A stretch of 63,930 bases of DNA, filler included, from Octopus bimaculoides (GCF_001194135.2; 5 parts of 5 records of this genome joined end to end with filler, not necessarily neighbours in it), one strand, 5' to 3'; shown: positions 25,958 through 47,355, counted from the first letter of the whole stretch. Translations and numbers: made by a program. The notes: generated from the sequence alone by a model not told the origin.

Positions 25958-26275
25958 ACTTATTCTCTGGATGCCTAGTACTTATTCTATTGGTCTCTTT
26001 TGCCGAACCGCTAAGTTACGGGGACGTAAACACACCACCATCGGATGTCAAGCGATGTTGAGGGGACATAGACACACAAATATATACACGCACATACATA
26101 TATATACATATATACAACGGGCTTCTTTCAGTTTCCGTCTACCAAATCCACTCACATGGCTTTGGTCGGCCCAAGCCTATAGTAGAAGACACTTGCCCAA
26201 GGTGCCACACAGTAGGAATGAACCCAGAACCATGTGGTTGGCAAGCAAGCTACTTACCACACAGCCACTCCTGCG
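25958..26275 (-). mobile_element. SINE family A, nearly full length
   Basis: Reverse complement gcaggagtggctgtgtggtaagtagcttgc..ggttctgggttcattcc (tRNA-like A/B boxes), internal (TA/TG)n, 3' body. tRNA-derived SINEs are known from Octopus; family name not verified. Confidence 0.92.
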
Positions 26276-26539
26276 GCTGAAAAATGACTAAATGCGAAAT
26301 TAAGGCAATAAGCATCGATACTTTAGTTGTCCAAATTGTAAGATACATTGTGAGATAAAATATCCAAATACGTGCTAAACAAATTCACTAGATTATACAA
26401 AGAAATAATGGAAATAATCAGCGCATTTAGAATGTATCTCCCAAGGTCTGAAATAGTGTCCACAGATGTTCACCATGGAATTAAAAAAACAATTAGAAAA
26501 TATCCAACGAAGAACTAGAAAATTATCTAGTGCAGAATG

Positions 26540-27062: not shown

Positions 27063-27276
27063 GTTTTCTACAATTGGCACAGTGTCTGAAATTTTGGAGA
27101 CAGGTCTATTTGGTTACATCAACCAAAATGCAAAATGCTCAACTAGTACTTATTTGATCAACCTCCGAATAGATGAAAGGCAAAGTCGACTTCGGTGGAA
27201 TTTGAACTCAGAATGTGAAGACACAAAATGCCACTAAACATGTGTCGTTGGCGTAACATTTCTGCCGGTTGCTGCT
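27063..27276 (-). mobile_element. SINE family B
   Basis: gatgaaaggcaaagtcgacttcggtggaatttgaactcagaa matches 45555-45600 and the reverse complement of 61190-61235. Confidence 0.8.
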
Positions 27277-27304
27277 TTAATGTTACTAATTAATAAATTA
27301 TTCA

Positions 27305-27503
27305 TTTCAAGCTTTAGCTCAAGGCTAGCAATTTAGGACAAGGCGCAGGTCGATTACATCGACCTCAGTGTACTTATTTTATTGACTCCGAAAGGATGAA
27401 GGACAACGTGGACCTCAGTGGAATTTGAACTCATAACGTAAAGGCAGATGAAGTGCTGTTAAGCATTTGTGCGTGGCAGTAACGATTCTGTTAGCTCGCC
27501 ACC
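27305..27503 (-). mobile_element. SINE family B, second tandem copy
   Basis: cgaaaggatgaaggacaacgtggacctcagtggaatttgaactcataacgta..ttagctcgcc. Confidence 0.8.
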
Positions 27504-28689
27504 TTAACACTTCTAAATAATAATAAATTATTGTCTATTAAAATGTAAGCTCCGCTGCAGATTTATATCCACAAATCGTATTCCCAATAAGAAGATTATT
27601 TCTGCAGGCTTTTTATTTGCTTTTCAAAATACTTTTAGGGACAACTAAATCAATACATTTTTTTAAGTGTTCCATATAAATTCTGTTAGGTTAATACATT
27701 TATTAATGTTATTCTTTTTTGCTTCTTTTGTTTCAAAGTTCACTGATCTATAGTTATTGTAGTTTATTTCCATACACCATCAATCACGACTAAATTTAAA
27801 ATGTTTACTGCTTGAAGGTAAGCTTAGACTCTCTGCATTACTGTGAAGAAGCAAGTTTTAAAAAATATTTACTCTCCTTGATTTCTTTTATCTTTATATA
27901 GAAACATCCTATATGCTAAATAATATTAAAAAAATTAATAAAATTATCGTCAATAATACTCAAAAGTTATATACTTTTAATATCCCTGAGTTAAGAGCTA
28001 TCGATCAACACGTTCATGATTAAAATGCACACACTTGTCAACAGATATGCGCATGGATGCATACTCATAAATACAAATACACACATACTAGCAAGTACTC
28101 AGAAAGATATCCTCATACACGGCACAAACGAATGCACACGCATAAGATATATGAGGGTGTATTTATACAAAATCTTGATGCACTAGTACGTTGCTTAAAG
28201 CATTACGCACGTGCAAAGCATCTGCGATCTTTTAGATGCCATATACTGATGCATAGATAGAGACACTAAGAAGTGAATCGATCACTAGAGGGTGAGTTAA
28301 ATAAATTAATAAATTCAGGAGATGAGGGAACGACAAAGAGATGCAGTAAGAGATTAATGGAATATTTATAGTTAGGTAAATATCACAAACATGTGCGCCG
28401 TTGGATACAGCGGATCCATTTATTCAACGTTTTCGAACGGGAATAGCTGTAGAAACAAAAGAATAAATACAGAGGGTAGTATTAAGTCAATCTGTTTTGT
28501 TGCACTTTTGATTATTGTTTATCACAATATATACTCCCATCAACATGTATTTAAAGTGAATAGATTACGTGTTTGATAAGTCCATTTTCTGTATGTTAAT
28601 TTCTATCAATATTATATACAGTGAAGTGCACAACAATGACATAATGGTTTCAAAATTTGTTTTATATGTTCGCTCAAAGTAAGTTGTTT

Positions 28690-28850
28690 GGGGCTATTTG
28701 CCCATTACATCGACTTAAATACTTGATGGCTTCTCTATTTTATCGATCTTGAAAGAATGAAAGGCAAACCTAAGCGTGTCGAAGTTGAACTCATATTGTA
28801 AAGGGCCGAAAGGAATGCCGCTAAGTATTTTGTTCGGCGCGCTAACAGTC
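28690..28850 (-). mobile_element. SINE family B, decayed
   Basis: tatcgatcttgaaagaatgaaaggcaaa..gttgaactc..ccgctaagtattttgttcggcgcgctaac. Confidence 0.65.
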
Positions 28851-29915
28851 CCTAATAACTATTCCTCGAGGACAGAGCATAGATTTTGCTAAAATTCAAT
28901 GTAAATGATTTTGTAGTTGTTGTTACACGCAAATTTTCTATGCTTTGTGAAATTTCAAAACAAAATTATTTTTGGCACAAGAAAGAATAGTTCTATATAC
29001 ATTTTTAAAACTTAGTACAATGTCAAAATATGAATCAATAGTTATTTATAATGTTAAAAAAAGCACGAAACCTCATGTAAATTAATGGAGATATTATAGC
29101 ATATTGATTATACTGACAGAATTAATGCATACCACGTGCATTATATGACAGAAGGATCAAAAAGCCACATATCCCATACATATAATGTATATACACTTTT
29201 ATACATGCATATTTATACGTACCCATATGCATATTCAAAAGTGTGTGTGTAAATACATGCATACATATACACACAAACAGGCGCGCACACACACACACAC
29301 ACACACACATGGCTAGATAAAGAGCCAGGTGGTTATAAATGTGTTGTGTGCATATATATATATATAATACGGACATGTCATATTTGCACTGAACGTAAAT
29401 CATTCGAAGGGATCTAATGCGTGTCACAATACCACTGTATGTAATTAGTTTATTTTGAACTGCGACATTATTCTGAATGTCAAAAATAAACCGCAGCGAA
29501 GCCAATCTGTAAACATATACGTAGCATCATTCAATACATTGAACTATAACATGGTGTGTTATAGTTGAGTTGATATCATATTTACGCATATCAGAAATCA
29601 CCGGTTTAAATCTATTTCTATGTCCGTAGCAATATGATGTTGTGAAATATATCCTTTCACTGTGCAGAATGTATTTTTGTCACTGCTAATAGAGCCAGAT
29701 GCATGTAGTACTGAACATTTGGTGAACTATCGCAATTTGGAATTACATTTCCTGTCCAGAAACAGAATAGCATATTCGCTATGGTTTTCAGCTAGTATCT
29801 TTATCATTTGATATGAGTAATAACAAAGTTAATTTCTCGCTTTCTGTGACACAGCGTATTGAGCATTTTTGTTGTGGATCATTTCTCATCGTATTATGTT
29901 TAAAATGCAATTGTA

Positions 29916-30166
29916 TTGGGTTGGTGCATAATTATTGCGACCTTTTTCCAAGAAATTTTATTCAACAAAAACAATAACAATATTTAATAGAAACATCTTT
30001 AAATGGCGGTCTGACCGTCTGCCAAGCAAATGGGAAGCAGTAATTGAAGCAGATGGCGAATATGATCTGGAATAGGCATTTAAAGATGTTTTTGTTACAT
30101 GTTGTTATTGTTTTTGTTGAATAAAAGTTATTGAAAAAAATCTGCAATAATTATGCACCAACCCAA
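29916..30166 (+). mobile_element. Mariner-derived MITE with TA TSD and about 90-bp inverted arms
   Basis: TIR ttgggttggtgcataattattgc at both ends; TA at 29914-15 and 30167-68; central DRLPSKWEAVIEADGEYDLE* is a mariner C-terminus. Confidence 0.9.
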
Positions 30167-31448
30167 TAATAGCTGTAATCATATTATTGCCTTTTCACTA
30201 TTAGTAGGACCGATAACTAGCAAGTTGGATTGCAAGTGCTATATTACATTTATATATACATATTTTAAAAGAGATTATCTCCAAAGAATTTAAATTGAAT
30301 TTGGAAGATATATTGTACGATATTTAAAGTATACTTTCGAACAAAATTCTACAAAAACTTTTATAGAAGATAAACGATGAATAAGCAGACGAAGTACGAA
30401 GCTGAAGGCAAATTGCATCAGCGTTAAAGAGTACAAAAAGGAAAGATGGATCAACATTGACATACGCTGTACGAAATGATAGATTTCAACAATCCAGAAA
30501 ACATAACTTCTCACTTGCCCAATATAACAGATGAGTTCAGCACAGAGTATTTGGAATCTCAAAGAAAGAAGGGTGAAAGAAGTGAATAACGTCTGGGTAT
30601 TTTTGGAGGAATAGTGGTTCATTGATAAACACAGAAGGAAGTTTGTTTTTAACTCTAATAAATGTACAGATACGCACAGGCACACACACACACACACNNN
30701 NNNNNNNNNNNNNNNNNNNNNNNNNNNNNNNNNNNNNNNNNNNNNNNNNNNNNNNNNNNNNNNNNNNNNNNNNNNNNNNNNNNNNNNNNNNNNNNNNNNN
30801 NNNNNNNNNNNNNNNNNNNNNNNNNNNNNNNNNNNNNNNNNNNNNNNNNNNNNNNNNNNNNNNNNNNNNNNNNNNNNNNNNNNNNNNNNNNNNNNNNNNN
30901 NNNNNNNNNNNNNNNNNNNNNNNNNNNNNNNNNNNNNNNNNNNNNNNNNNNNNNNNNNNNNNNNNNNNNNNNNNNNNNNNNNNNNNNNNNNNNNNNNNNN
31001 NNNNNNNNNNNNNNNNNNNNNNNNNNNNNNNNNNNNNNNNNNNNNNNNNNNNNNNNNNNNNNNNNNNNNNNNNNNNNNNNNNNNNNNNNNNNNNNNNNNN
31101 NNNNNNNNNNNNNNNNNNNNNNNNNNNNNNNNNNNNNNNNNNNNNNNNNNNNNNNNNNNNNNNNNNNNNNNNNNNNNNNNNNNNNNNNNNNNNNNNNNNN
31201 NNNNNNNNNNNNNNNNNNNNNNNNNNNNNNNNNNNNNNNNNNNNNNNNNNNNNNNNNNNNNNNNNNNNNNNNNNNNNNNNNNNNNNNNNNNNNNNNNNNN
31301 NNNNNNNNNNNNNNNNNNNNNNNNNNNNNNNNNNNNNNNNNNNNNNNNNNNNNNNNNNNNNNNNNNNNNNNNNNNNNNNNNNNNNNNNNNNNNNNNNNNN
31401 NNNNNNNNNNNNNNNNNNNNNNNNNNNNNNNNATATATATATATATAT

Positions 31449-31854
31449 AATACCTCGTTCAGTGATTTAACAGTGCTTGTTTTCACTTTTTCGAGATCAG
31501 TGTATATTTTCACTGGAAAAAGTATATACGTATTTGCATCGGGACATTTTTCGTATCGAAGATCGGCGATTGTCGTACGCTGAGGACGGGTAAATACCTA
31601 GAAATTCGAGTCCGTGCGTATCGCAGATCAAGATGGGAAGGATGACTTCCCTTTGCAAATACAGACAGGACACAGATGTGTGTCAATAGCCAGCTGGAGG
31701 AGATGTTCTCATGTGGCTAAAAGCAACAGTAACATCCACCCGTAGGGGTCAGCCGCATTTAAGTGGCAAATATACTTCACCTTGTCGTGCAGTTACTGTT
31801 AATACCTCGTTCAAAAATTTAACATTGCTTGTTTTCACTTTTTCGGGATCAGTG
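31449..31854 (+). mobile_element. Retrozyme/Penelope-pLTR-like unit: 352-bp period bounded by 54-bp direct repeats, containing a hammerhead
   Basis: 31449-31502 vs 31801-31854 match at 49/54; no ORF; hammerhead at 31561-31629; several further hairpins. Confidence 0.7.
31561..31629 (+). ncRNA. Type I hammerhead ribozyme (best preserved in window), predicted cleavage after GUC at 31612
   Basis: Core CTGAGGA (31580-86), stem II gggt-aaat-acct, GAAA (31601-04), T-tcga-G, TC. Stem I cgtacg/cgtgcg extends through gcgat/atcgc and gatc/gatc. Folded by eye; activity untested. Confidence 0.8.
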
Positions 31855-33125
31855 CCTTAGAAGCGCTAAATTTTGGTGCTAAAATTACAGTATGTTTTTT
31901 GTTCTCTGACTACACTAGTTATATCCTCTATTGAATACACTCAACTGCAACATATTCCAGCATGGTTGTTGGGCGTCTAGCTGCTACAAAATGACCAAGT
32001 GTAAGGGAATTTTTTAAAATTTCTGTTGGTTTCCGAGGGATAAGATGTTTTGCGGTATATACTTAATGTTGATCTAATCGATTTCCCCCGCCAAAAATAG
32101 AATACCTGAAATTCATGTGGCAATGCGAAAACTAATGACTTTTTAATACTTTAGTGTACCTTTCTTGCTTTACACATTTACTGTAATAATAGTTCCGAAA
32201 GGTATCTTTGTCCTCATTCTCTCTTTGTCATTATTCTCTCTAACTTGCTGCCTTTCCTGGGTTTCATAGATATTTGCAAAAGTTTACATTAGGCATTATC
32301 TTGAGTTGCCTTCTCTTCTATTCTTATAATATTCTTCTCTTTTTAATCCCATCTGGTAAGACGTTTCTTTCATTTTTATTGTTTTGTAGAAAGTGACTGT
32401 AGTTATATTTCCCTGGGAGCTCCATATTCGTGTTGGATCTGATTTCCTTTGAAACGCACTTACGTACATCACTGATTTCTTAGGGAAAGCCAAAGGTATC
32501 ACAAAATACTTTTAAGCTCTTAATAGATTTCTGGGCTCTTATACGTAAAGTAAATAAATCGATTGCTTTCCTTATTATGGCCCTTTATTTTTAGTTTGAT
32601 TGCAGAAGACATGAATATGTCACGTGCTACACAGTTTAATACATTAACACACTTCTTGGCTAAAATGAAAGCTAACAACGTATATCAGATGGTATATACG
32701 CAATACAATAGACACTTCTCAACTCTTGCTTCATAAATCAGTGAATAGTGAAAGTCAAATGGAACACTAGCTCAGTTTCTAAAGATATTCATCAAATGCA
32801 CTTACATTTTCAATAAGCATCCTTTCTATTCTCTCCTTTATATAAGAGGAAGCAATGAACACTAAAACATATGTACAGGTTATACAAATAGAAATATACA
32901 CCTCAAACTGAATTTATATATGATTACTCTGCTATCTCTATAATCGCTCTTGGACGATTTAGTACAACTGAGAATACCAGTAAGACAAAATTTGTTCAAT
33001 ATAATACATATATATTGCGGATACAACTCAGTCGAGAACCATTCGACGAGAGATCGAGAGGGTTCTAAGTCATTCTCGAGTGACACCTTTATCTCGGAAT
33101 TATATTTCGAAAGTTTTATAGGCCC

Positions 33126-33290
33126 AGGCGTGGCTTAGCTGCGTGGGAAAAGTTTGCTTCTCAATCACGTGGTTCCGAGTCCTGTCCTACTGCGTGGTAC
33201 CTTTGACAAGTGTTTTCTATTAAAGCCACGCGCCGATCAAAGCCTTCTAAGTGGATTTAATAGTTGAAATTGAAATCCCGTTGTGTGAAT
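33126..33290 (+). mobile_element. SINE family A, 5' half, decayed
   Basis: aggcgtggc..tttgcttctcaatcacgtggttccgagt..ggtacctttgacaagtg..aaagccttctaagtggattt. Confidence 0.75.
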
Positions 33291-33772
33291 ATATATATAT
33301 ATATATAATAAGGGTGATAAATTGGATATTAACTTAATTAACACCAATTTAAAACCAGTGGCCTAGCACAAAGGAAATTCTGAAAATTCAGAAAAATTAT
33401 ATTACTTACATGTGAGTAGGGATGACCATTAAGTGGACATCCTTTACGCTAGAAATCGACCATCAACGGTCAAACCTCTTCTAGAGGAGAGAAGAAATTT
33501 GGAAAGATGTCANNNNNNNNNNNNNNNNNNNNNNNNNNNNNNNNNNNNNNNNNNNNNNNNNNNNNNNNNNNNNNNNNNNNNNNNNNNNNNNNNNNNNNNN
33601 NNNNNNNNNNNNNNNNNNNNNNNNNNNNNNNNNNNNNNNNNNNNNNNNNNNNNNNNNNNNNNNNNNNNNNNNNNNNNNNNNNNNNNNNNNNNNNNNNNNN
33701 NNNNNNNNNNNNNNNNNNNNNNNNNNNNNNNNNNNNNNNNNNNNNNNNNNNNNNNNNNNNNNNNNNNNNNNN

Positions 33773-34624: not shown

Positions 34625-35906
34625 TTTACAATTTAGACATGACCGAGGAAAGAAGCTTATATTCTTGTTTGTTAATGTTTCGGAAAAACAGTACCTATTG
34701 TATTACTATTTCTTAAATGTTTTATTTACTACAGAAAGCCTTTCAGTGTAATGTAACAGAATATAGAACTGGAAGAATTACAGAAAGTAGTCAAAAGAAA
34801 TAAATGTGTTTCAGAATCCTTCATTTCAAGAAATCAATATCCAGTCAGAGACACTTCAGAAGTTATCGCCTATTGGAGTATTTTACGTACCTGTTATAAT
34901 AGATGACGAATAGATATGATATGGGACAATGTGCATGAAGAAGATATTCTTGATCTCATGTAATTCTACCATTGATAATTAACATAACAGAATTATACAA
35001 TTAAAAGTTAGCCATTACCACAACAGATAATCCACATCAGGTGAGTTTTTTCATTTCTTGGGAGGCATAACCTGCTATGCCTACGATCTAACAAGGAGAC
35101 GATTTCTAATTTAATACTATTAACAGTGAAGAATATATTACAGTCTATAATTCATATCCTAGCAAAATTTAAATTAACACTTGTTTTATTTTAACTTGAT
35201 ATTCATATATGCTCTAATGGACATATAAAATATGATAGGAAACTAACGAAGAAAGTGTTACAATGCCTCCACTAGTCAAATGCATTAAACATTGTTTGCT
35301 AACTTGGTGAGGAAAACAGTCATTGTTTGAAATACAAAATAGGTAATCATGCTACTTGATTAATAGCAAACATTGATTTATACATAGGCTCACAGCAGTA
35401 TGAATAAGATATGTCGAGGGACAGAAATTATAATTAGATATGTTCACGCCAATCTAATGCAAGTTAACGATATCTGTAAAATAAATCTAAAGAGATCACG
35501 TATGAGTTTGGTTTACAGAAACAATATCACTCTTCGTATAATCAATGGGGTATACTAAGCACAAAAGAGAATGATGAATGATAAATAAAATTCTGAAATT
35601 GTCGTGTCTTTTTTAATGCTATGAACCCGATAATTAAATTGACATGGTTTCAACAATTAAACAAAAACCGGTAAGAGTTTCTATTTTTAAACAGCTGACC
35701 GTTATTAAAATTTGTAATTATAATATGATAAAAGTAAATATTTTAAACACAGTTGGTGTTTTAATTACTTCGGTGAAAAGATAACTTTATTAGTGATTCG
35801 CAAAAAATATGAATTTTTTAGATAATAAATGAAGTAAATTGGAAACACTCGCTTGTGTTGATGCCGAAACACATAGACACATACATACATATATAAGTAT
35901 GTATGC

Positions 35907-36004
<98 letters not shown>

Positions 36005-36046
36005 ACAATTTAGACATGACCGAGGAAAGAAGCTTATATTCTTGTT
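34625..36046. repeat. Exact 45-bp direct repeat pair (34625-34669 and 36002-36046)
   Basis: tttacaatttagacatgaccgaggaaagaagcttatattcttgtt occurs twice; the second copy lies between (GT)n and (AT)n tracts. Confidence 0.95.
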
Positions 36047-39000
36047 ATATATATATATGGATGTATATACGTGTATACATGAATATACATGCATGTATAA
36101 ACGCGCACGCATATATATTCTTTACTCTTTTACTTGTTTCTGTCTCTGTTTTATATACATGCTAGAGCACCGCCTACTCACGTACGCACGCACACTTACA
36201 CATACGCATACACGTGCACATACGCATACACGTGCACATACACACAGAAGCACACACACACGCGCGCGCACGCACATGTTTACGTTTCCGACAGATTAAT
36301 ACCAAGTAGTGTAAAAAAATTGCTGTAGTATACAAACTACTCACTGCATTAGTTAACTGTAATATGTTTTTCCTCTGTGCCACTACTGTTAACAGTAAAG
36401 GTTATATATGACTCTCTCTACGTACAGCAAATGAATTTGATTGAACGGATTATATTCAAAATCCCTCGAGGGAGAATTGAATTTAGGTATGACGTCAAGC
36501 CCAAGAAATGATAGATTACAATTTAATCCTGAAGACCAGTGAATACATTGACAGATAGATCAGAGAAACCCTGAAATATACAAATTTCTTTGAATAGACA
36601 TCTTAGAAGCCACAAAGAAATTTTGCTTCTTTCCAATTACGAAAATCCTATTAAATTTACTATTAAAAAACAAAAACAATGTTAGTGTCATAACATCAAA
36701 ACATTATTAAAAACTAATTAATCTAGAATATAGATTGTACTTTTTTTTTTACTATATTTTGTAGGAAATAGTAAATAGGAAAATATTGAGCATGCTGTTG
36801 AAAAGAATCATAACTGAAGTAATACTGCAATGTACCAGTAGTCGTGCTATATAATCAGCTATTTAGTTTTAATATGAGGTTACAGTAACAATAAACACAT
36901 AATCATATTTTCAACATTTTCTAAATGTTAAAAGTTATTTGAACACTTGTGGACTCAGAATGAGCTACTCTATGATCAGTAACATTCTAGCTGTGATCCT
37001 CTCGTCATGAACATAAGTATACAGGACTAAATTAGATTGCTAACAGCTTTCTATTAGATGGAAATTTAACTGTTAATTCTAGTAAGACAGGGAACCATGT
37101 TAGAAGTTATCCTGAACAGATGGGTTACAGATTCACTTCATTGATGTTGTAATTGTGTAGCTTGAGATCTATTTCATCATCACTTCTATTTTATTCAAAC
37201 TTATAGAAATTTTGTTAGTGTGTGTTTTAAGATAGAGGCAAGTAATTCTCGTAAAATTATAAAAGTTACCGACAATAGAAAGACAAAACTTCTTACAAAT
37301 TAAAAATTATACAAATGAAAAATTATACAATAATTCAAAATAAGTATCATAATAGAAAATCAAAGCTTGTTGTTGCTATATGCTGCAACATTTATGATGT
37401 TTATTATTATTACTGTATGATTACGTAGACCACATAGTCCTGAATGCAAAAATAATTAGAGTATTTTATTCTTTTCGTCAATTTGTATTCTCCACGGTAG
37501 ATATATTAAGTAGAGATGCACTCTATCTATGAAATCATAAGAGGTACATAATTTTTTTTCGGCCAAATTAATATGATCTATAGTTAGAAGATATCAAAAT
37601 TGTAGTTAAGATATGTTTTGGAGGAATTTTCATGTGCCATAACTATTCAAATAATATTTGTATTTGTATTGTAGTTAACAGCATCAAACTTATATAACTG
37701 AAACAAGTGATATCTAATTTTGACATTAGTATACATGACAAGAGTACTAGCAACAGTAGAGATGCAAAATATTATGGGGATATCAAAGCAAGTTTACAGT
37801 GTAATGTATTGGACACATCAATTTTATTAGACAATAGTGTTCGTTTTTATAAACACAACTGAAAAAATACTTTTGCAATTCTTTTACGAGTTTAATTCTT
37901 ACTCTCCTTCTTAGACTAATCTTCTGCTCATTTCAACTTCTCTACCGTTACAAGCTGCCCGTTCTTCCCGACACCTTTCTATCAACATAAGCATTATTGG
38001 GAGAGAACTTGGCGATCGTACGATTGTGCATTGTTCATATTTACAACTATAAAATCTTAGAAAAGCTACTATCATTAAGATTATCATTCCATAGACTACT
38101 AATCGCACCTTTACATCAGAGAATAAGCTTTCCTAGTAATTCTTAATAATATGTTTACACTACGCTTTAATCGGTTTAATTTCCGATCCTTAGCAGATGT
38201 TTTATTCTTGTATGAGTACATACAATATAGAGTAAAGGAAAATATCTAAAAAAATATTCTCTGCAGATGCGTTTACTCTCAGCTATGTCATTTGATTCAA
38301 TTCTGGTGGTGAGTTATTCTGTTATGAGATTTCTACTCACTATATGGTGATGGAATGAAAATATCTTTTGTACGAATAATGGAACCCAAGGCTGCTTTAT
38401 TCAAATGTAATGTTTATGTACGTCGGTACACATAAACAGCTATTGACATATGCATAAATGTACACGTATATACCACGCAGATTCATCACTGTTTCAGGTT
38501 TCCAAATTACTCTCGAAAGGTACTTATCTAATATGCAACACAGCATTTATTTATGAAACGAACCTCTTACTTACGCAGTCATACCAGCCTTACTTACACA
38601 GTCATATTCATCCATCCATCCGTTCACCCAGCCACCCAGCCAGCCAGCTAGTTGTGCAAGCATGTATGCATGGGCACATACTTATTATACATAACTTATT
38701 ATACATACATACATACATACAAACAGACAAACAGGCAGACATGCATATGTGCATATGAGTGTGCATTCGTATGTATAAATACAAAGGAGTGTGTACAAAC
38801 ACTCGCTTTCTCTATAAACCAAAATCCTAAAATATGATGACTAAAAGTCAACTAGAACATAAATTCTAACTGATTTTGTTTGTTGCAGTCAGCCAAATCA
38901 TTGTCAATATAATATCTCAAAGCGTCATTCAATAAACATGATGGGTAAAAATCTATTAATACATCACGTATTGGCTTTTTTCTTGAATAATTTCAATTCC

Positions 39001-42659: not shown

Positions 42660-43443
42660 ATTGTACATTTGCATGTTACTTGTATAAATATGAGAAATAC
42701 ACTAACATTCAAATATATATACATTGTAAACATGTTACACAGGCAGATACGCTATGTGTTCTCATTTGTGCTCATATATACCAGCATGAACATATGTGTG
42801 TATGTATATATATATTCATATATATACGTATGCATGCGGGTGCCTGTGTATATGTTCACATAAAGACACTAACCTATTTATATATATATATACATACATA
42901 TATACTTAATTTCCTACACACTACAAATACACACACGTACACGCACCCTTAAACATATATATATATATATATATGTACTAGTATGTTGATAATTGTATGG
43001 TCCATATACAAGCAACTGTACTCTTCACATTTAAAGGCATTCTGTACCTGCATATCAGTGTGCTAGTTAAGTATTTCCTACTTTAATACTCAGATACAAA
43101 TCGGTACCCTACCAAACTCATTAACATTTTTGTGTGTAAGTATGATACATAATCAAATTCGGGTACTGCAGTGGGTTGTGTACTCCACCATCCAATGTCG
43201 TACGACGTGGGGCGCCAATTACAGGATAGGTTACTATGCAGGATACGAGCCAAATATTAGTTTAAAACATATAAATAAGCGGGGAAGAGATGGGTCGTTC
43301 ACAGTCTGGTGAGTCATACATGTGTTTCGCCCAAAAGCCCAAGTTATTACGCTGAAATATTATGCAGCAATGCGTTGTACCTCATCAATGTCCCGCAATG
43401 TTTTTATGCATGATATGTATGTATATACGTATACATATACATC

Positions 43444-43477
<34 letters not shown>

Positions 43478-43663
43478 TATATATATATGTGTGTGTGTGT
43501 GTGTGTCTGTGTCTGTGTGTGTGTCTGTGTATGCATGTATATACACACATATAAATATACATACATACCTATATCTATATAATTATATTTTTATATATAT
43601 ACACACATACACACACACGCACACACACACGCGCACACACACATACACAAACACACACATATG

Positions 43664-44460
43664 CAGGGTCGCCATTTTACACTTTTAATTTTTCGCATAC
43701 GCATTGTTTGTTTTGTCGACTACACTGTATAGTAGGGTCAGTTGGGCACCGTTTCTAAGAAAGATAGCACCATAGCGCAAATTCACCCTGCCACAAATTT
43801 GGAAACGACATGCTGTACTGCTTCGCATTCGCGCTGGAAACTCCCACATGAACAGATGGTGAACACACAGAATAACCGTTGGCTTTTAGAAAATGATAAA
43901 AATCAAAGAACGAGTCAACACCATCTTCCCCCCCCCCCCACAGCCTCAGAATCAACNNNNNNNNNNCATCTTCCCCCCCCCCCCACAGCCTCAGAATCAA
44001 CATGGATGTCTACATTAAGTGCTTTGTGGAGGTAGTACTGCGCTGGCTCAAGAGGGTGGCTTGTGGCAGACCTTGTGTCTCGCAACAGGACTCTGCACCA
44101 TGCCACACAAGCAGGAGAACTCAGTCACAGCTGTCAGCCAATATCTGCGACCACATCACCCCTAGCATTTGGCCACCTAACTCCCCAGACTGCAACATCC
44201 TTGATTATTATGTGTGGGGTGCAGTTGAGCGAGAGACCAGCAAAACTCCTTGTAACACCAAAGATGAACTGAAGGCAAGGATTATGGCAGCATTCACCAA
44301 CTTAAACAAGGAGACCGTCCAGAAAGGTTGCAAGAGTATTTAGTATTTAGTGTTTCAAGGTATTTTTATGTAATTTTTGTAAATGTATTTGTTAAAATGA
44401 GATATCAGAGTTATTTTCCTTTTTGCGAAATTTAGATGACAATATATTCACCGCACCCTG
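43664..44460 (+). mobile_element. Internally deleted maT (DD37D) Tc1/mariner transposon
   Basis: Ends cagggt..accctg+TA; ORF 44002-44343 has QQDSAPCH and WPPNSPDCNILDYYVWG with 37 residues between the second and third catalytic Asp. Confidence 0.88.
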
Positions 44461-45293
44461 TATATGCCCATTTAAACATGGATGTTCTGTTAAAACAAAC
44501 TACACTGCGGTAGATACCATGAGAGTAATTCTCATATTGGCTTTTGTTGCAAATTGGCCACTTGGTATGTATTGCAGTATAGTTTTGTTCTAACAGAACA
44601 TCGACGTGAAAGTGGGCATAAATATTACCTATCGGTATTAATATTGCCTCTGTCACTAATAAATATTTTATATTTGTATGTTTGTGTATATGTATGTGTA
44701 TGTCTATATCTATATATAAATTTGGCGCCATGACCAGGAATATCGTACGTTTTACGCTGGCGTAGCCGAGCTGTTCCCTCGTCAATATGTGAAGAAGACG
44801 TTCCTCGCTATGTGGCCAGGATTTTATGTCATACTTGCAAACATAACCTATCATAAATTTTTTAACACGTTGCTATTCACTGTGATGATCTCTTGTTAAA
44901 ATGTTTGCTCTGTATATAATCGTGTATAGGTATCTATTTAGAGTGAATTCATAGAAAATTGCATTAAATAATAAAAATAAAATCAGCTATAAAAAAGAAA
45001 AGCTATTCACATACGTTGATAATGTCCAGTGTTAATGTCGTGTGGAATGTGATAATGGGTTAAAATTGATAATTAACATCGAATGAGATATGATAATTGC
45101 AAATTTGAATTGATAATGTTGAGTGAAAATAAATAATCTTGAACAGCAAATGGTAATGACGAATAGGAACTGGTAATACTGAATGGAAGGAGATAATTTT
45201 AAATGAAAATTCATAATTGTAAGTGTGAAGTGAGACTGTTGAATGGAAAGTAATGGCGTTGATTAGAATATGTTAATGCTGAGCTGGAGTCAT

Positions 45294-45445: not shown

Positions 45446-45663
45446 TAATAATCTTTTCTACTCTAGGCACAAGGCTCGAAATTTTAGGGAAGGAGGCCAG
45501 TCGATTAGATCGACTCCAGTACGCAACTGGTACTTAATTTATCGACCCCGAAAGGATGAAAGCAAAGTCGACCTCAGCGGAATTTGAACTCAGAACGTGA
45601 AGACAGACGAAGTATCGCTAAGCATTTCGCCCGGCGTGCTAACGTTTCTGCCAGCTCGCTGCC
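45446..45663 (-). mobile_element. SINE family B, full length
   Basis: Reverse complement ggcagcgagctggcagaaacgttagcacgccgggcgaaatgcttagcg..gagttcaaattccgc; matches 61121-61352. Confidence 0.92.
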
Positions 45664-47355
45664 TTCGAATTTAATAATAATGCATATACAATGTTCATGC
45701 ACACTTGCACACACACGTANNNNNNNNNNNNNNNNNNNNNNNNNNNNNNNNNNNNNNNNNNNNNNNNNNNNNNNNNNNNNNNNNNNNNNNNNNNNNNNNN
45801 NNNNNNNNNNNNNNNNNNNNNNNNNNNNNNNNNNNNNNNNNNNNNNNNNNNNNNNNNNNNNNNNNNTATATATATATATATATGTATATAAATATACACA
45901 TATATATATATTTATATATATACATGCATATAAGTAATTGCCCTGTGTGAGGGGAGGGGGTGTTAGTAAGTGAGTGGGTCTAAAAGTATTACACCTTAGT
46001 CTCGGTAATCCGCAGATAAATGTCTTTTGTACGCTAATGTAGATATTCCTATGTTTATTTGACCCCAGTGCTTTTTTTTTTTTTTTTCCAATTCACAATT
46101 TTCACTTTTAGTATTCCTAATTTCCTCAATTTTTTTGTTCTGTATATCGTTAAACATGAACTATGAATATCGTCAGCTTTAAATATTCAGATATAGACGT
46201 ACACATTACACACTCATTTTTATGAAATGATCCGTTATGTTACTAAATTTTATATGAATATTCTTGAAACAGAAATGCAGATATATATATTTCTTATTTA
46301 AGAAGTAAATGAAACACATAACTGAAGCATTTCGAATTTCGAATTTCCTCTGCCCAATGTGCTCTTTCCCGCATGCTTAATCTCACTCACTTCCAATGGT
46401 CTTTAGTAACCTATTATATTTGGACTCCTTATTGTTACATATACGCCAGACTTTTCACAAGTAATTCCAACTGCGGAATCAGATATCACGACATATCAAG
46501 TGGATATGTACGGAATGACTCGTACATATTTAACCTTGCAAAAGACAATCAAAGTTGAATATTTCTGAAATGAACATAACATTTAGAAGCCTATCACGGA
46601 ACCACTTCACGACGCTCGACCCGCTACACAAAGTACCAAAGAAACGCTTAGGTCACACCATACCATGTTAGAAAATGAAATGATACCTTACAAAGCGCTA
46701 CTTGGTGATCAAGGCCGGAATGCTTTTGATCATAGTTTTAAAAGATCAGTGTTGACGGAATCTCATCACGGACAACCAGTTTGGGTTAGTGTATCACCAT
46801 GTCTCTTATTATTAAATACTATTGCAAAATACTTTTTTTTAAGTATATGTCCTCCCTGAGCTTTACAGAAAAAAAGTAGTAAAACCTTTCATAACTCACG
46901 CAATATCATCTTAGAATGGACTCTAAATAATGAAGTCCACGTTTATACCATGGCAATAAAAAAAAAATGGAAAATAAGATCGTCAACTCTGAAATGCTTT
47001 CGATGAGGGCTCCCTGAATTTGAACAACAATTACATTCAAACTGAAATTTTTCTCTCACTTAATTTTTTAGACCCTCTAATATCCTAACTGTGTGTAATT
47101 TTATACTCGTATAGGCTATGTATCTACTTTCTACATTCATTCATGTATTCCTAACGCTCTTTATATAATGAATATATGCGCGCGTGTGTGCATCTGTTCA
47201 ATATTACATAACCGTTGCTCTCATTCATTATTTTACTGATTATCTATTTTACCCATCTTACGAAATACTGCATTATATATAGTACAGGCTTTGTTATATC
47301 AATCTACTACAAGTCTGCACTAACAATTATCTAATTGGTGGGTTTTTATTTATTT

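What the first reader, a model, noticed from the sequence alone, without database searches (positions are those of the whole stretch)
31449..31854. 352-bp ORF-less, highly structured unit between direct repeats: candidate cephalopod retrozyme / circRNA-forming element
Seen: 54-bp direct repeats (49/54 identical) 352 bp apart enclose the hammerhead. The unit also holds further hairpins (gggaag..cttccc, gacaca-gatg-tgtgtc, tagcca..tggcta, gccgc..gtggc) and has no coding frame. The left repeat abuts an (AT)n tract and a 735-N gap that could hide more units. Known: non-autonomous retrozymes are short tandem units with one hammerhead each, processed into small circular RNAs. Inference: this is a 1.15-mer of such an element. 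I do not know of a described octopus family but cannot check.
Basis: partly seen in the sequence, partly recalled or inferred. Interest (0 to 1): 0.85.

Follow-up and report, generated by a model that had tools for sequence, protein, structure and literature searches.

The report
Solitary hammerhead-bearing retrozyme-like repeat in octopod DNA
A 407-bp non-coding stretch looks like one old, isolated copy of a small ribozyme-carrying mobile element of a kind already known in other animals. It has only one imperfect ribozyme, so this copy cannot make a circular RNA on its own, and no second copy could be found with the tools available.

Summary
Two 55-nt direct repeats (50/55 identical, 352 nt apart) bracket a 297-bp ORF-less, strongly folding body. 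The body carries a type I hammerhead-like motif at 31574-31618, predicted to cut at 31612/31613. An (AT)n tract and a 735-N gap lie to the left.

The motif has the full catalytic core (CUGAGGA / GAAAU / GUC). Helix I has 6 bp, helix II has 4 bp, and helix III has 2 bp with a palindromic UCGA loop. It is the only such motif in the piece, against about 0.01 expected by chance.

The motif is not canonical. A C.A mismatch replaces the conserved G10.1-C11.1 pair. No Rfam hammerhead model matches it, even at E<=10. A model built from four validated retrozyme ribozymes scores it at only 10.5 bits (E about 0.5).

Size, GC content, fold density, lack of ORFs and the (TA)n flank fit a metazoan non-LTR retrozyme, which is a non-autonomous relative of Penelope-like elements. 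The locus holds only 1.15 units and one ribozyme, so it cannot release or circularise a unit by itself.

No other copy was reachable, so copy number, tandem arrays and RNA circles are untested. Verdict: a plausible new member of a known kind, probably a dead monomer. Interest is modest.

The parts
31433..31449 (.). (AT)8.5 microsatellite directly abutting the left end of the element. It is a possible (TA)n insertion target and also the contig edge next to the 735-N gap.
   Evidence: TRF and sequence. (TA)n is a reported preferred target of some Penelope-like elements (PMC8557442). The piece has 21 (AT)>=6 tracts, so adjacency by chance is roughly 1-2%.
31448..31502 (+). Left copy of the 55-nt terminal direct repeat (R). 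It represents the terminal redundancy of a unit longer than one length.
   Evidence: the repeat finder family D1; blastn E = 7e-17.
31503..31799 (+). 297-bp unique body of the unit: ORF-less, hairpin-rich and carrying the hammerhead-like motif.
   Evidence: Folds; ORF list and Pfam.
31530..31662 (+). Imperfect long hairpin of about 133 nt whose tip is the hammerhead core. It amounts to an extended helix I.
   Evidence: Inverted repeat I3; MFE structures.
31574..31618 (+). Type I hammerhead-like motif.
- Helix I: 31574-79 / 31613-18 (6 bp).
- Core: CUGAGGA, 31580-86.
- Helix II: 31588-91 / 31596-99 (4 bp), with a C31587.A31600 mismatch at its base.
- GAAA: 31601-04.
- Helix III: A31604-U31611 and U31605.G31610, with palindromic loop UCGA.
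- Cleavage triplet: GUC, 31610-12.
- Predicted cleavage: between 31612 and 31613.
   Evidence: Sequence. The descriptor scan gives a unique hit against 0.01 expected. It is the top hit of model R1, but only 10.5 bits, E = 0.52. No Rfam hit.
31669..31684 (+). Hairpin GACACA-GATG-TGTGTC.
31687..31719 (+). Hairpin TAGCCA...TGGCTA.
31752..31767 (+). Hairpin GCCGC...GTGGC.
31800..31854 (+). Right copy of the 55-nt repeat (R). Homology to the unit ends at 31854/31855.
   Evidence: No similarity to the unit downstream of 31854.

Best explanation
The stretch 31448-31854 is a single, old, non-autonomous insertion of 1.15 unit lengths. It belongs to a hammerhead-bearing retroelement of the metazoan non-LTR retrozyme type, which is related to Penelope-like elements, and it sits in an octopod genome.

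**Shown here:**
- An R(55)-U(297)-R(55) architecture.
- No ORF.
- A composition distinct from the surroundings: GC 43% vs 34%, CpG obs/exp 1.09 vs 0.78.
- A densely paired 352-nt unit.
- One + strand type I hammerhead-like motif at the tip of a long hairpin.
- An (AT)n tract at the left junction.
- No RT/EN coding sequence nearby.

**Inferred from the life cycle described for such elements:**
1. Multimeric master copies elsewhere are transcribed.
2. Hammerheads of neighbouring units pair through the self-complementary AUUCGAGU segment into a dimeric ribozyme and cut after GUC.
3. The 352-nt monomer is circularised by an RtcB-type tRNA ligase.
4. A Penelope-like RT copies the circle or multimer for slightly more than one turn.
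5. The GIY-YIG endonuclease integrates the cDNA, here at a (TA)n tract. This leaves the 55-nt terminal redundancy.

**Consequence for this copy.** It has one ribozyme only, so it can be cut once at most and cannot yield a unit-length or circular RNA. Its ribozyme also carries a C.A mismatch where G10.1-C11.1 is normally conserved. The two R copies differ by 9%. It is therefore most likely an inactive 'monomer derivative'.
For: - **Repeats and spacing:**
- **Hammerhead descriptor:** unique in the piece, with 0.01 expected per simulated piece and 0/1000 as good. No match in 40 kb of other eukaryotic loci under a looser descriptor.
- **Architecture:** it matches the published description of canonical metazoan type I HHRs, namely helix I 6 bp, helix II 4 bp, helix III 1-2 bp capped by a 2-4 nt palindromic loop (PMC4209133). 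It also meets the core rule CUGANGA/GAAAY/RUH (supplement of PMC7229834).
- **Precedents in validated retrozymes:** CUGAGGA occurs in axolotl Ax330, and a mismatch at the base of helix II occurs in HHR_Amex2.
- **Unit length:** 352 bp vs mussel Mg353 and axolotl 331/353.
- **GC:** 43% against the <45-50% rule.
- **Fold density:** -0.33 kcal/mol/nt and 64% paired, within the range of four validated retrozymes. Circular fold z = -6.05.
- **No ORF or Pfam hit in the unit:**
- **No RT/EN in the flanks:**
- **(TA)n targeting by PLEs:**
- **Literature context:** monomeric derivatives are common and retrozymes are related to PLE pLTRs (10.64898/2026.07.22.740005). 235 Hammerhead_1 hits are reported in the giant squid genome (PMC6962438).
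- **Octopod origin:**
Against: - No Rfam hammerhead family matches, even at E<=10 on a 73-nt search.
- Model R1, built from four experimentally validated retrozyme hammerheads, gives only 10.5 bits, E = 0.52.
- C31587.A31600 replaces the conserved G10.1-C11.1 pair, so activity is doubtful.
- Only 1.15 units and one ribozyme are present, whereas tandem repetition is the defining feature of the family.
- No second copy was found anywhere that could be searched.
- There is no sequence similarity to the coral, mussel or axolotl retrozymes outside the core.
- Strong folding is not unique: 3 of 62 native windows fold more stably.
- Across a 2-3 Gb genome, a descriptor with 0.01 chance hits per 26 kb would give on the order of 1000 chance matches.
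Confidence: 0.55

Rival explanations
1. It is a chance hammerhead-like motif inside ordinary structured non-coding DNA that underwent a local partial tandem duplication by slippage or unequal exchange. No ribozyme and no mobile element are involved.
For: - The Rfam hammerhead models do not match at all.
- An independent covariance model is not significant.
- The helix II closing pair is broken.
- No other copy was seen.
- The piece contains other, even more stable, folding windows.
- A genome-wide scan with this descriptor would give many chance hits.
Against: - The full 11-nt core plus three correctly placed helices is expected only 0.01 times per piece, and never at the observed quality.
- Helix sizes and the palindromic loop 3 match the published metazoan type I pattern.
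- The motif sits in a unit of typical retrozyme length, GC and fold density.
- The unit differs in composition from its flanks.
- The unit ends exactly at a (TA)n tract.
Confidence: 0.22
2. It is the terminus (pseudo-LTR or partial tandem) of a truncated autonomous Penelope-like element, not a separate non-autonomous family. The coding part has been deleted or lies in the 735-N gap or beyond.
For: - PLEs carry type I or minimal hammerheads in their pLTRs.
- PLEs insert as partial tandems with 5' truncation.
- PLEs often target microsatellites, including (TA)n.
- Most genomic PLE-type hammerheads are solitary remnants of truncated PLEs.
- A gap lies immediately upstream.
Against: - No RT or GIY-YIG signal was found in six-frame Pfam scans of 28600-30697 and 31855-33512.
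- No RT or GIY-YIG motif was found anywhere in the piece.
- A 735-N gap is too short for a PLE ORF of about 3 kb, if the gap size is right.
- The (AT)n tract separates the element from the gap.
- The hammerhead here has the canonical 6/4/2 helix pattern, not the minimal PLE pattern of long helix II, short helix I and no helix III.
Confidence: 0.15
3. The element is only the 297-bp body (31503-31799), and the 55-nt repeats are an unusually long target-site duplication made on insertion.
For: - Metazoan retrozymes are said to have TSDs larger than 4 bp when present.
- Very long TSDs are known for some retroelements; R9 is cited in PMC8557442.
- R folds as an independent hairpin.
Against: - 55 bp is far beyond usual TSD lengths.
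- R+U = 352 nt matches known unit sizes better than 297 nt does.
- No empty site is available for comparison.
Confidence: 0.05

Closest known systems
Metazoan non-LTR retrozymes (Cervera & de la Pena 2020, PMC7229834), e.g. Mytilus galloprovincialis Mg353 and axolotl Rtz_331/Rtz_353
   Same: - Unit of about 350 bp.
- Low GC.
- No ORF, LTR, PBS or PPT.
- One type I hammerhead per unit, with helix I 6 bp, helix II 4 bp and a weak helix III with a palindromic loop, implying action as a dimer.
- A highly base-paired monomer.
- CUGAGGA core as in Ax330.
- A mismatch at the base of helix II, as in HHR_Amex2.
   Different: - Only 1.15 units and one ribozyme at this locus; the known families are defined by dimers up to large multimers.
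- C.A rather than G-C at 10.1/11.1.
- No primary-sequence similarity outside the core.
- Copy number, expression and circularity are unknown.
- No cephalopod family is described in the searched literature.
Hammerheads in pseudo-LTRs of Penelope-like elements (Cervera & de la Pena 2014, PMC4209133; Craig et al. 2021, PMC8557442)
   Same: - Type I topology.
- Palindromic 15.2-16.2/loop 3 region, suited to dimer formation.
- Partial-tandem insertion structure.
- Microsatellite (TA)n junction.
- Frequent solitary copies.
   Different: - No RT/GIY-YIG ORF nearby.
- PLE min-HHRs typically have a long helix II (6-8 bp), a short helix I and little or no helix III, and they conserve G10.1-C11.1. Here the helices are 6/4/2 bp and 10.1/11.1 is mismatched.
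Classical hammerhead satellite transcripts (newt satellite 2, Schistosoma Sm-alpha, cave-cricket pDo500), now regarded as retrozymes. This comparison rests on my own knowledge and PMC7229834.
   Same: Short non-coding repeats of a few hundred bp, each with one type I hammerhead that works best as a dimer.
   Different: Those are abundant tandem arrays with canonical cores that Rfam Hammerhead_1 recognises. This locus is solitary and is not recognised by Rfam.
Plant LTR retrozymes (Cervera et al. 2016, PMC4918200)
   Same: Non-autonomous, ribozyme-bounded, circRNA-based retroelements.
   Different: The plant elements have type III hammerheads inside 300-400-bp LTRs, a PBS and PPT, 4-bp TSDs, GC above 55% and 600-1000-nt circles. 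None of this applies here.

Membership tests
Hammerhead ribozyme, type I | Conserved catalytic core C3-U4-G5-A6-N7-G8-A9 ... G12-A13-A14-A15.1 ... U16.1-H17 | tested here: met
   CUGAGGA at 31580-86, GAAA at 31601-04, U31611, C31612. Also meets the CUGANGA/GAAAY/RUH rule.
Hammerhead ribozyme, type I | Three helices around the core, with helix I open (type I topology) | tested here: met
   Helix I is 6 bp and extends into a 133-nt hairpin. Helix II is 4 bp. Helix III is 2 bp plus a UCGA loop.
Hammerhead ribozyme, type I | Conserved G10.1-C11.1 pair closing helix II next to the core | tested here: not met
   C31587 opposite A31600, and no alternative register restores a pair (sequence). PMC4209133 calls this pair highly conserved.
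Hammerhead ribozyme, type I | Match to a curated covariance model (Rfam Hammerhead_1 and relatives) | tested here: not met
   No hammerhead family is listed at gathering score, at E<=10 on 568 nt, or at E<=10 on 73 nt. My own model from four validated retrozyme HHRs gives 10.5 bits, E = 0.52.
Hammerhead ribozyme, type I | Loop 1 / loop 2 tertiary contacts | not tested
   An internal loop (UGU/U) lies 6 bp from the core, and loop 2 is AAAU. Whether they can interact was not evaluated. Mussel retrozyme HHRs also lack most of the archetypal contacts.
Hammerhead ribozyme, type I | Self-cleavage after H17 | not testable with these tools
   Needs in vitro transcription of monomeric and dimeric constructs.
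Metazoan non-LTR retrozyme | Head-to-tail tandem repeats (dimers to multimers) of a 150-450-bp unit, one HHR per unit | tested here: not met
   Only 1.15 units and a single HHR are present. Homology stops at 31448 against (AT)n and at 31854. The 735-N gap leaves a small residual uncertainty.
Metazoan non-LTR retrozyme | Non-coding, low GC (<45-50%), no LTR/PBS/PPT | tested here: met
   GC is 43%. There are no Pfam hits in the unit ORFs. The terminal repeat is only 55 nt. PBS and PPT were not searched for formally.
Metazoan non-LTR retrozyme | Stable, highly base-paired monomer RNA | tested here: met
   Circular MFE -115.8 kcal/mol, z = -6.05, 64% paired. Per-nt energy lies within the range of four validated retrozymes.
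Metazoan non-LTR retrozyme | Multicopy family dispersed in the genome | not testable with these tools
   No cephalopod genome can be searched by DNA. There was no second copy in the 26.5-kb piece, the 20-kb O. vulgaris locus, or the metagenome and viral collections. ORF-based look-ups were empty.
Metazoan non-LTR retrozyme | Expressed as unit-length linear and circular RNA | not testable with these tools
   Needs RNA data. This locus alone cannot yield a unit, because it has only one cleavage site.
Autonomous Penelope-like element (pLTR) | Adjacent ORF with RT and GIY-YIG endonuclease | tested here: not met
   Six-frame Pfam scans of 28600-30697 and 31855-33512 gave no RT/EN. A motif grep of the whole piece was negative.
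Autonomous Penelope-like element (pLTR) | Partial-tandem insertion and microsatellite target | tested here: inconclusive
   The R-U-R structure and the left (AT)n junction fit. The right flank has no (TA)n, and the piece has 21 such tracts.
Plant LTR retrozyme | Type III HHRs inside long terminal repeats, PBS/PPT, GC above 55% | tested here: not met
   The HHR is type I and lies in the unique body. The repeats are 55 nt and GC is 43%.

The most novel reading that the evidence does not exclude
Octopods may harbour an active retrozyme family of about 352 nt. Its hammerhead would carry lineage-specific departures from the consensus (non-G-C 10.1/11.1, U15.2.G16.2, N7 = G), which would make it invisible to the Rfam models. 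In that case, covariance-model-based annotation undercounts cephalopod ribozymes and retrozyme circRNAs, and multimeric master copies produce abundant small circular RNAs in octopus tissues.
Probability: 0.15. Interest if true: 0.5.

Novelty: new member of a known kind. Interest (0 to 1): 0.3.

Why it matters
If the family is real, it would extend ribozyme-processed circRNA retroelements to cephalopods. The searched literature records hammerheads in that group only as a count of Rfam hits in the giant squid genome. It would also give an example of a hammerhead variant that curated models miss. As it stands, the locus is a single, probably inactive copy of a kind of element already described in corals, mussels, insects and amphibians. 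Its main value is as a query sequence for a genome-wide search.

Tried and rejected
1. **Rfam** at gathering score and at E<=10 on 568 nt and on 73 nt: no ribozyme family. Only chance snoRNA/miRNA/CRISPR-DR hits appeared, far below their thresholds.

2. **Covariance model R1**, built from four validated retrozyme hammerheads. The candidate is the best hit in the piece but is not significant. The model is over-fitted to four sequences.

3. **Finding other copies through spurious ORFs.** Exact look-ups of two 58-aa unit ORFs and one homologue search returned nothing. The mariner search showed that the protein collection holds no ORF calls from this species' non-genic DNA, since the best identity was 71%. 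I therefore did not spend the last search on another unit frame.

4. **DNA pattern scans.** Two scans of metagenome contigs and one of viral contigs with hammerhead-specific patterns gave 0 hits.

5. **Local copies.** blastn of the unit against the piece and against L001/L002 found no further copies. A looser HHR descriptor on L001/L002 found none. Rfam on L001/L002 found none.

6. **tRNA-derived SINE idea.** The segment TTCGAGTCC resembles a B box, but ARAGORN finds no tRNA-like gene in the piece. Rejected.

7. **Homology to known retrozymes.** blastn against the coral, mussel and axolotl retrozymes gave only chance words.

8. **Fetching an octopus Penelope element to compare its pLTR.** No PLE fragment exists in the window or in the fetched loci to use as a query, and the supplement of PMC8557442 is not held.

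9. **Ambisense ribozymes, as in avsunviroids.** No motif was found on the minus strand.

Full report
**1. The observation**

The piece 25958-52501 is AT-rich (34% GC), full of microsatellites and broken by N gaps.

- The repeat finder reports one strong direct-repeat family in 31433-33000. The copies are 31448-31502 and 31800-31854, 55 nt long, 91% identical and 352 nt apart. Within the piece the blastn E-value is 7e-17.
- Three of the five differences are adjacent (31462-64), so the two copies may differ by only three events. The K2P distance is 0.097 if all five are counted.
- The left copy starts inside or next to (AT)8.5 at 31433-31449, which follows a 735-N gap.
- The four named hairpins are present. 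Three of them also form in the minimum-free-energy fold. The GGGAAG/CTTCCC pair does not form there, because that stretch is taken up by the long hairpin that carries the hammerhead.
- The unit folds at -118.3 kcal/mol (z = -5.2) on the + strand and z = -3.7 on the - strand. As a circle opened at the predicted cleavage site it folds at -115.8 kcal/mol, z = -6.05, with 64% of bases paired.
- No stop-free stretch exceeds 68 codons, and none of five unit ORFs hits Pfam.

One caveat applies to the folding result. Three of 62 native 352-nt windows of the piece fold even more stably; two lie in low-complexity or inverted-repeat sequence and the third was not examined. Strong folding alone is therefore not diagnostic.

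**2. The hammerhead**

Read directly from the sequence, the motif is:
- helix I: CGUACG (31574-79) / CGUGCG (31613-18), 6 bp
- core: CUGAGGA (31580-86)
- helix II: GGGU/ACCU (31588-91 / 31596-99), with loop AAAU
- GAAA (31601-04)
- helix III: A31604-U31611 plus U31605.G31610, around a UCGA loop

Helix I continues beyond a UGU/U internal loop into GCGAU/AUCGC and GAUC/GAUC. Overall it forms a 133-nt imperfect hairpin, 31530-31662.

The segment AUUCGAGU (31604-31611) is self-complementary, with two G.U pairs. Two copies could therefore form an 8-bp intermolecular helix III. This is the dimer mechanism described for metazoan type I hammerheads.

The layout is the one Cervera & de la Pena give for canonical metazoan hammerheads: helix I 6 bp, helix II 4 bp, and helix III 1-2 bp with a 2-4-nt palindromic loop (PMC4209133). 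It also satisfies their core rule CUGANGA/GAAAY/RUH (supplement of PMC7229834). The N7 = G variant CUGAGGA occurs in the validated axolotl Ax330 ribozyme.

Evidence that the motif is more than chance:
- My descriptor scan of both strands found this site only.
- 1000 first-order Markov simulations of the piece gave 0.01 loose matches per piece and none as good as the observed one.
- A looser descriptor found nothing in 40 kb of other eukaryotic DNA.

Evidence against a canonical, active ribozyme:
- The pair next to the core, normally G10.1-C11.1 and called highly conserved, is C31587.A31600 here, and no other register repairs it.
- Rfam lists no hammerhead family at gathering score, at E<=10 over 568 nt, or at E<=10 over 73 nt, where hits as weak as 7 bits were shown.
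- A covariance model that I built from the coral, mussel and two axolotl retrozyme hammerheads ranks this site first in the piece, but at only 10.5 bits, E about 0.5.

One precedent softens this. The axolotl HHR_Amex2 has a U.U mismatch at the base of helix II and still cleaves, weakly as a monomer and better as a dimer. My conclusion is that this is a hammerhead-type motif, probably real in origin, but non-canonical and likely impaired in this copy.

**3. Context**

- No RT, GIY-YIG or any other domain appears in six-frame Pfam scans of the 2.1 kb before the gap or the 1.66 kb after the element.
- No RT/EN motif appears anywhere in the piece.
- There is no tRNA-like sequence.
- Nothing downstream of 31854 resembles the unit, so there is no second hammerhead 352 nt away.
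- Upstream, the homology ends at the (AT)n tract. If the array simply continued, the sequence GTTACTGT that precedes the right repeat would precede the left repeat too.
- The unit is compositionally distinct from its surroundings: GC 43% vs 34%, CpG obs/exp 1.09 vs 0.78, in the top few percent of windows.
- The piece shares several short interspersed repeats and a Tc1/mariner remnant with a 20-kb locus of the Octopus vulgaris chromosome OX597814.1, at 75-88% identity. This supports an octopod origin.

**4. What it most likely is**

The features fit the metazoan non-LTR retrozymes:
- 150-450-bp AT-rich non-coding units
- one type I hammerhead per unit
- expression as linear and circular RNA
- circularisation by RtcB-type ligase rather than by the ribozyme
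- mobilisation probably by Penelope-like elements (PMC7229834).

A 2026 preprint reports that such retrozymes are related to PLE pseudo-LTRs and that monomeric derivatives are common (10.64898/2026.07.22.740005). The validated mussel and axolotl units are 331-353 nt. Their fold density (-0.21 to -0.41 kcal/mol/nt, 66-71% paired) brackets the values here (-0.33, 64%).

The 55-nt terminal redundancy is what one expects in either of two cases. An RT may copy a circular or multimeric template for slightly more than one unit, or a PLE-style insertion may form a partial tandem. The (AT)n junction agrees with the (TA)n preference reported for some PLEs. This is weak evidence, because the piece has 21 such tracts.

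With a single ribozyme the transcript of this locus can be cut once at most. It cannot release a 352-nt RNA and therefore cannot form a circle. At best this is a dead-end monomer of a family whose multimeric masters lie elsewhere.

**5. Rivals**

- **Chance motif in a local partial duplication.** This is favoured by the Rfam and covariance-model failures and by the lack of other copies. It is disfavoured by the descriptor statistics and by several independent retrozyme-like properties occurring together.
- **Truncated terminus of an autonomous PLE.** This is favoured by how common such relics are. It is disfavoured by the absence of coding remnants and by the canonical rather than minimal helix pattern.
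- **297-bp insertion with a 55-bp target duplication.** This is possible but unlikely.

**6. What could not be done**

No tool here searches cephalopod genomes by DNA. ORF-based look-ups, a protein search, two metagenome scans and one viral scan found nothing. Copy number, tandem arrays, relation to octopus PLE termini, self-cleavage and RNA circles all remain untested.

**7. Novelty**

Searches of the paper library found no description of retrozymes in cephalopods. The only related statement is a count of 235 Rfam Hammerhead_1 hits in the giant squid genome. If confirmed, this would be a new member of a known kind.

**8. Verdict**

The locus is most likely a solitary, aged copy of a PLE-related hammerhead retroelement with a defective ribozyme. 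Interest is modest (0.3).

Noticed in passing
window 43668-44461 (+): Remnant of a Tc1/mariner-type transposase. ORF 44002-44343 has a weak Pfam DDE_3 hit and 31 homologues at 46-71% identity, including an Octopus vulgaris predicted protein. It shows 74.7% nucleotide identity to O. vulgaris locus L002 9918-10441.
   Followed up: partly
window 25958-26278, 27141-27507, 45499-45665: Short interspersed repeats, each matching several places in one 20-kb O. vulgaris chromosome locus at 75-88% identity. They look like SINE-like families shared with Octopus, and they support an octopod origin for the window.
   Followed up: partly
window 29830-30180 (also 43206-43557 and 35814-36165): These 352-nt windows fold more stably than the finding's unit (-137, -127 and -122 kcal/mol). 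29932-30150 carries near-identical ORF strings on both strands, i.e. an inverted repeat. 35814-36165 lies in low-complexity, microsatellite-rich sequence, and 43206-43557 was not examined.
   Followed up: no
window 31448-31799: The unit is compositionally unlike its surroundings: GC 43% vs 34% and CpG obs/exp 1.09 vs 0.78, in the top few percent of 352-nt windows in the piece.
   Followed up: partly
locus L001 (ENA ERZ21867824, contig ctg115491l): Most homologues of the mariner ORF come from 100-500-kb contigs filed under ENA metagenome assemblies. The one fetched, L001 (sample ERZ21867824), looks eukaryotic and shares only the mariner with this window, so it is not a close relative.
   Followed up: no
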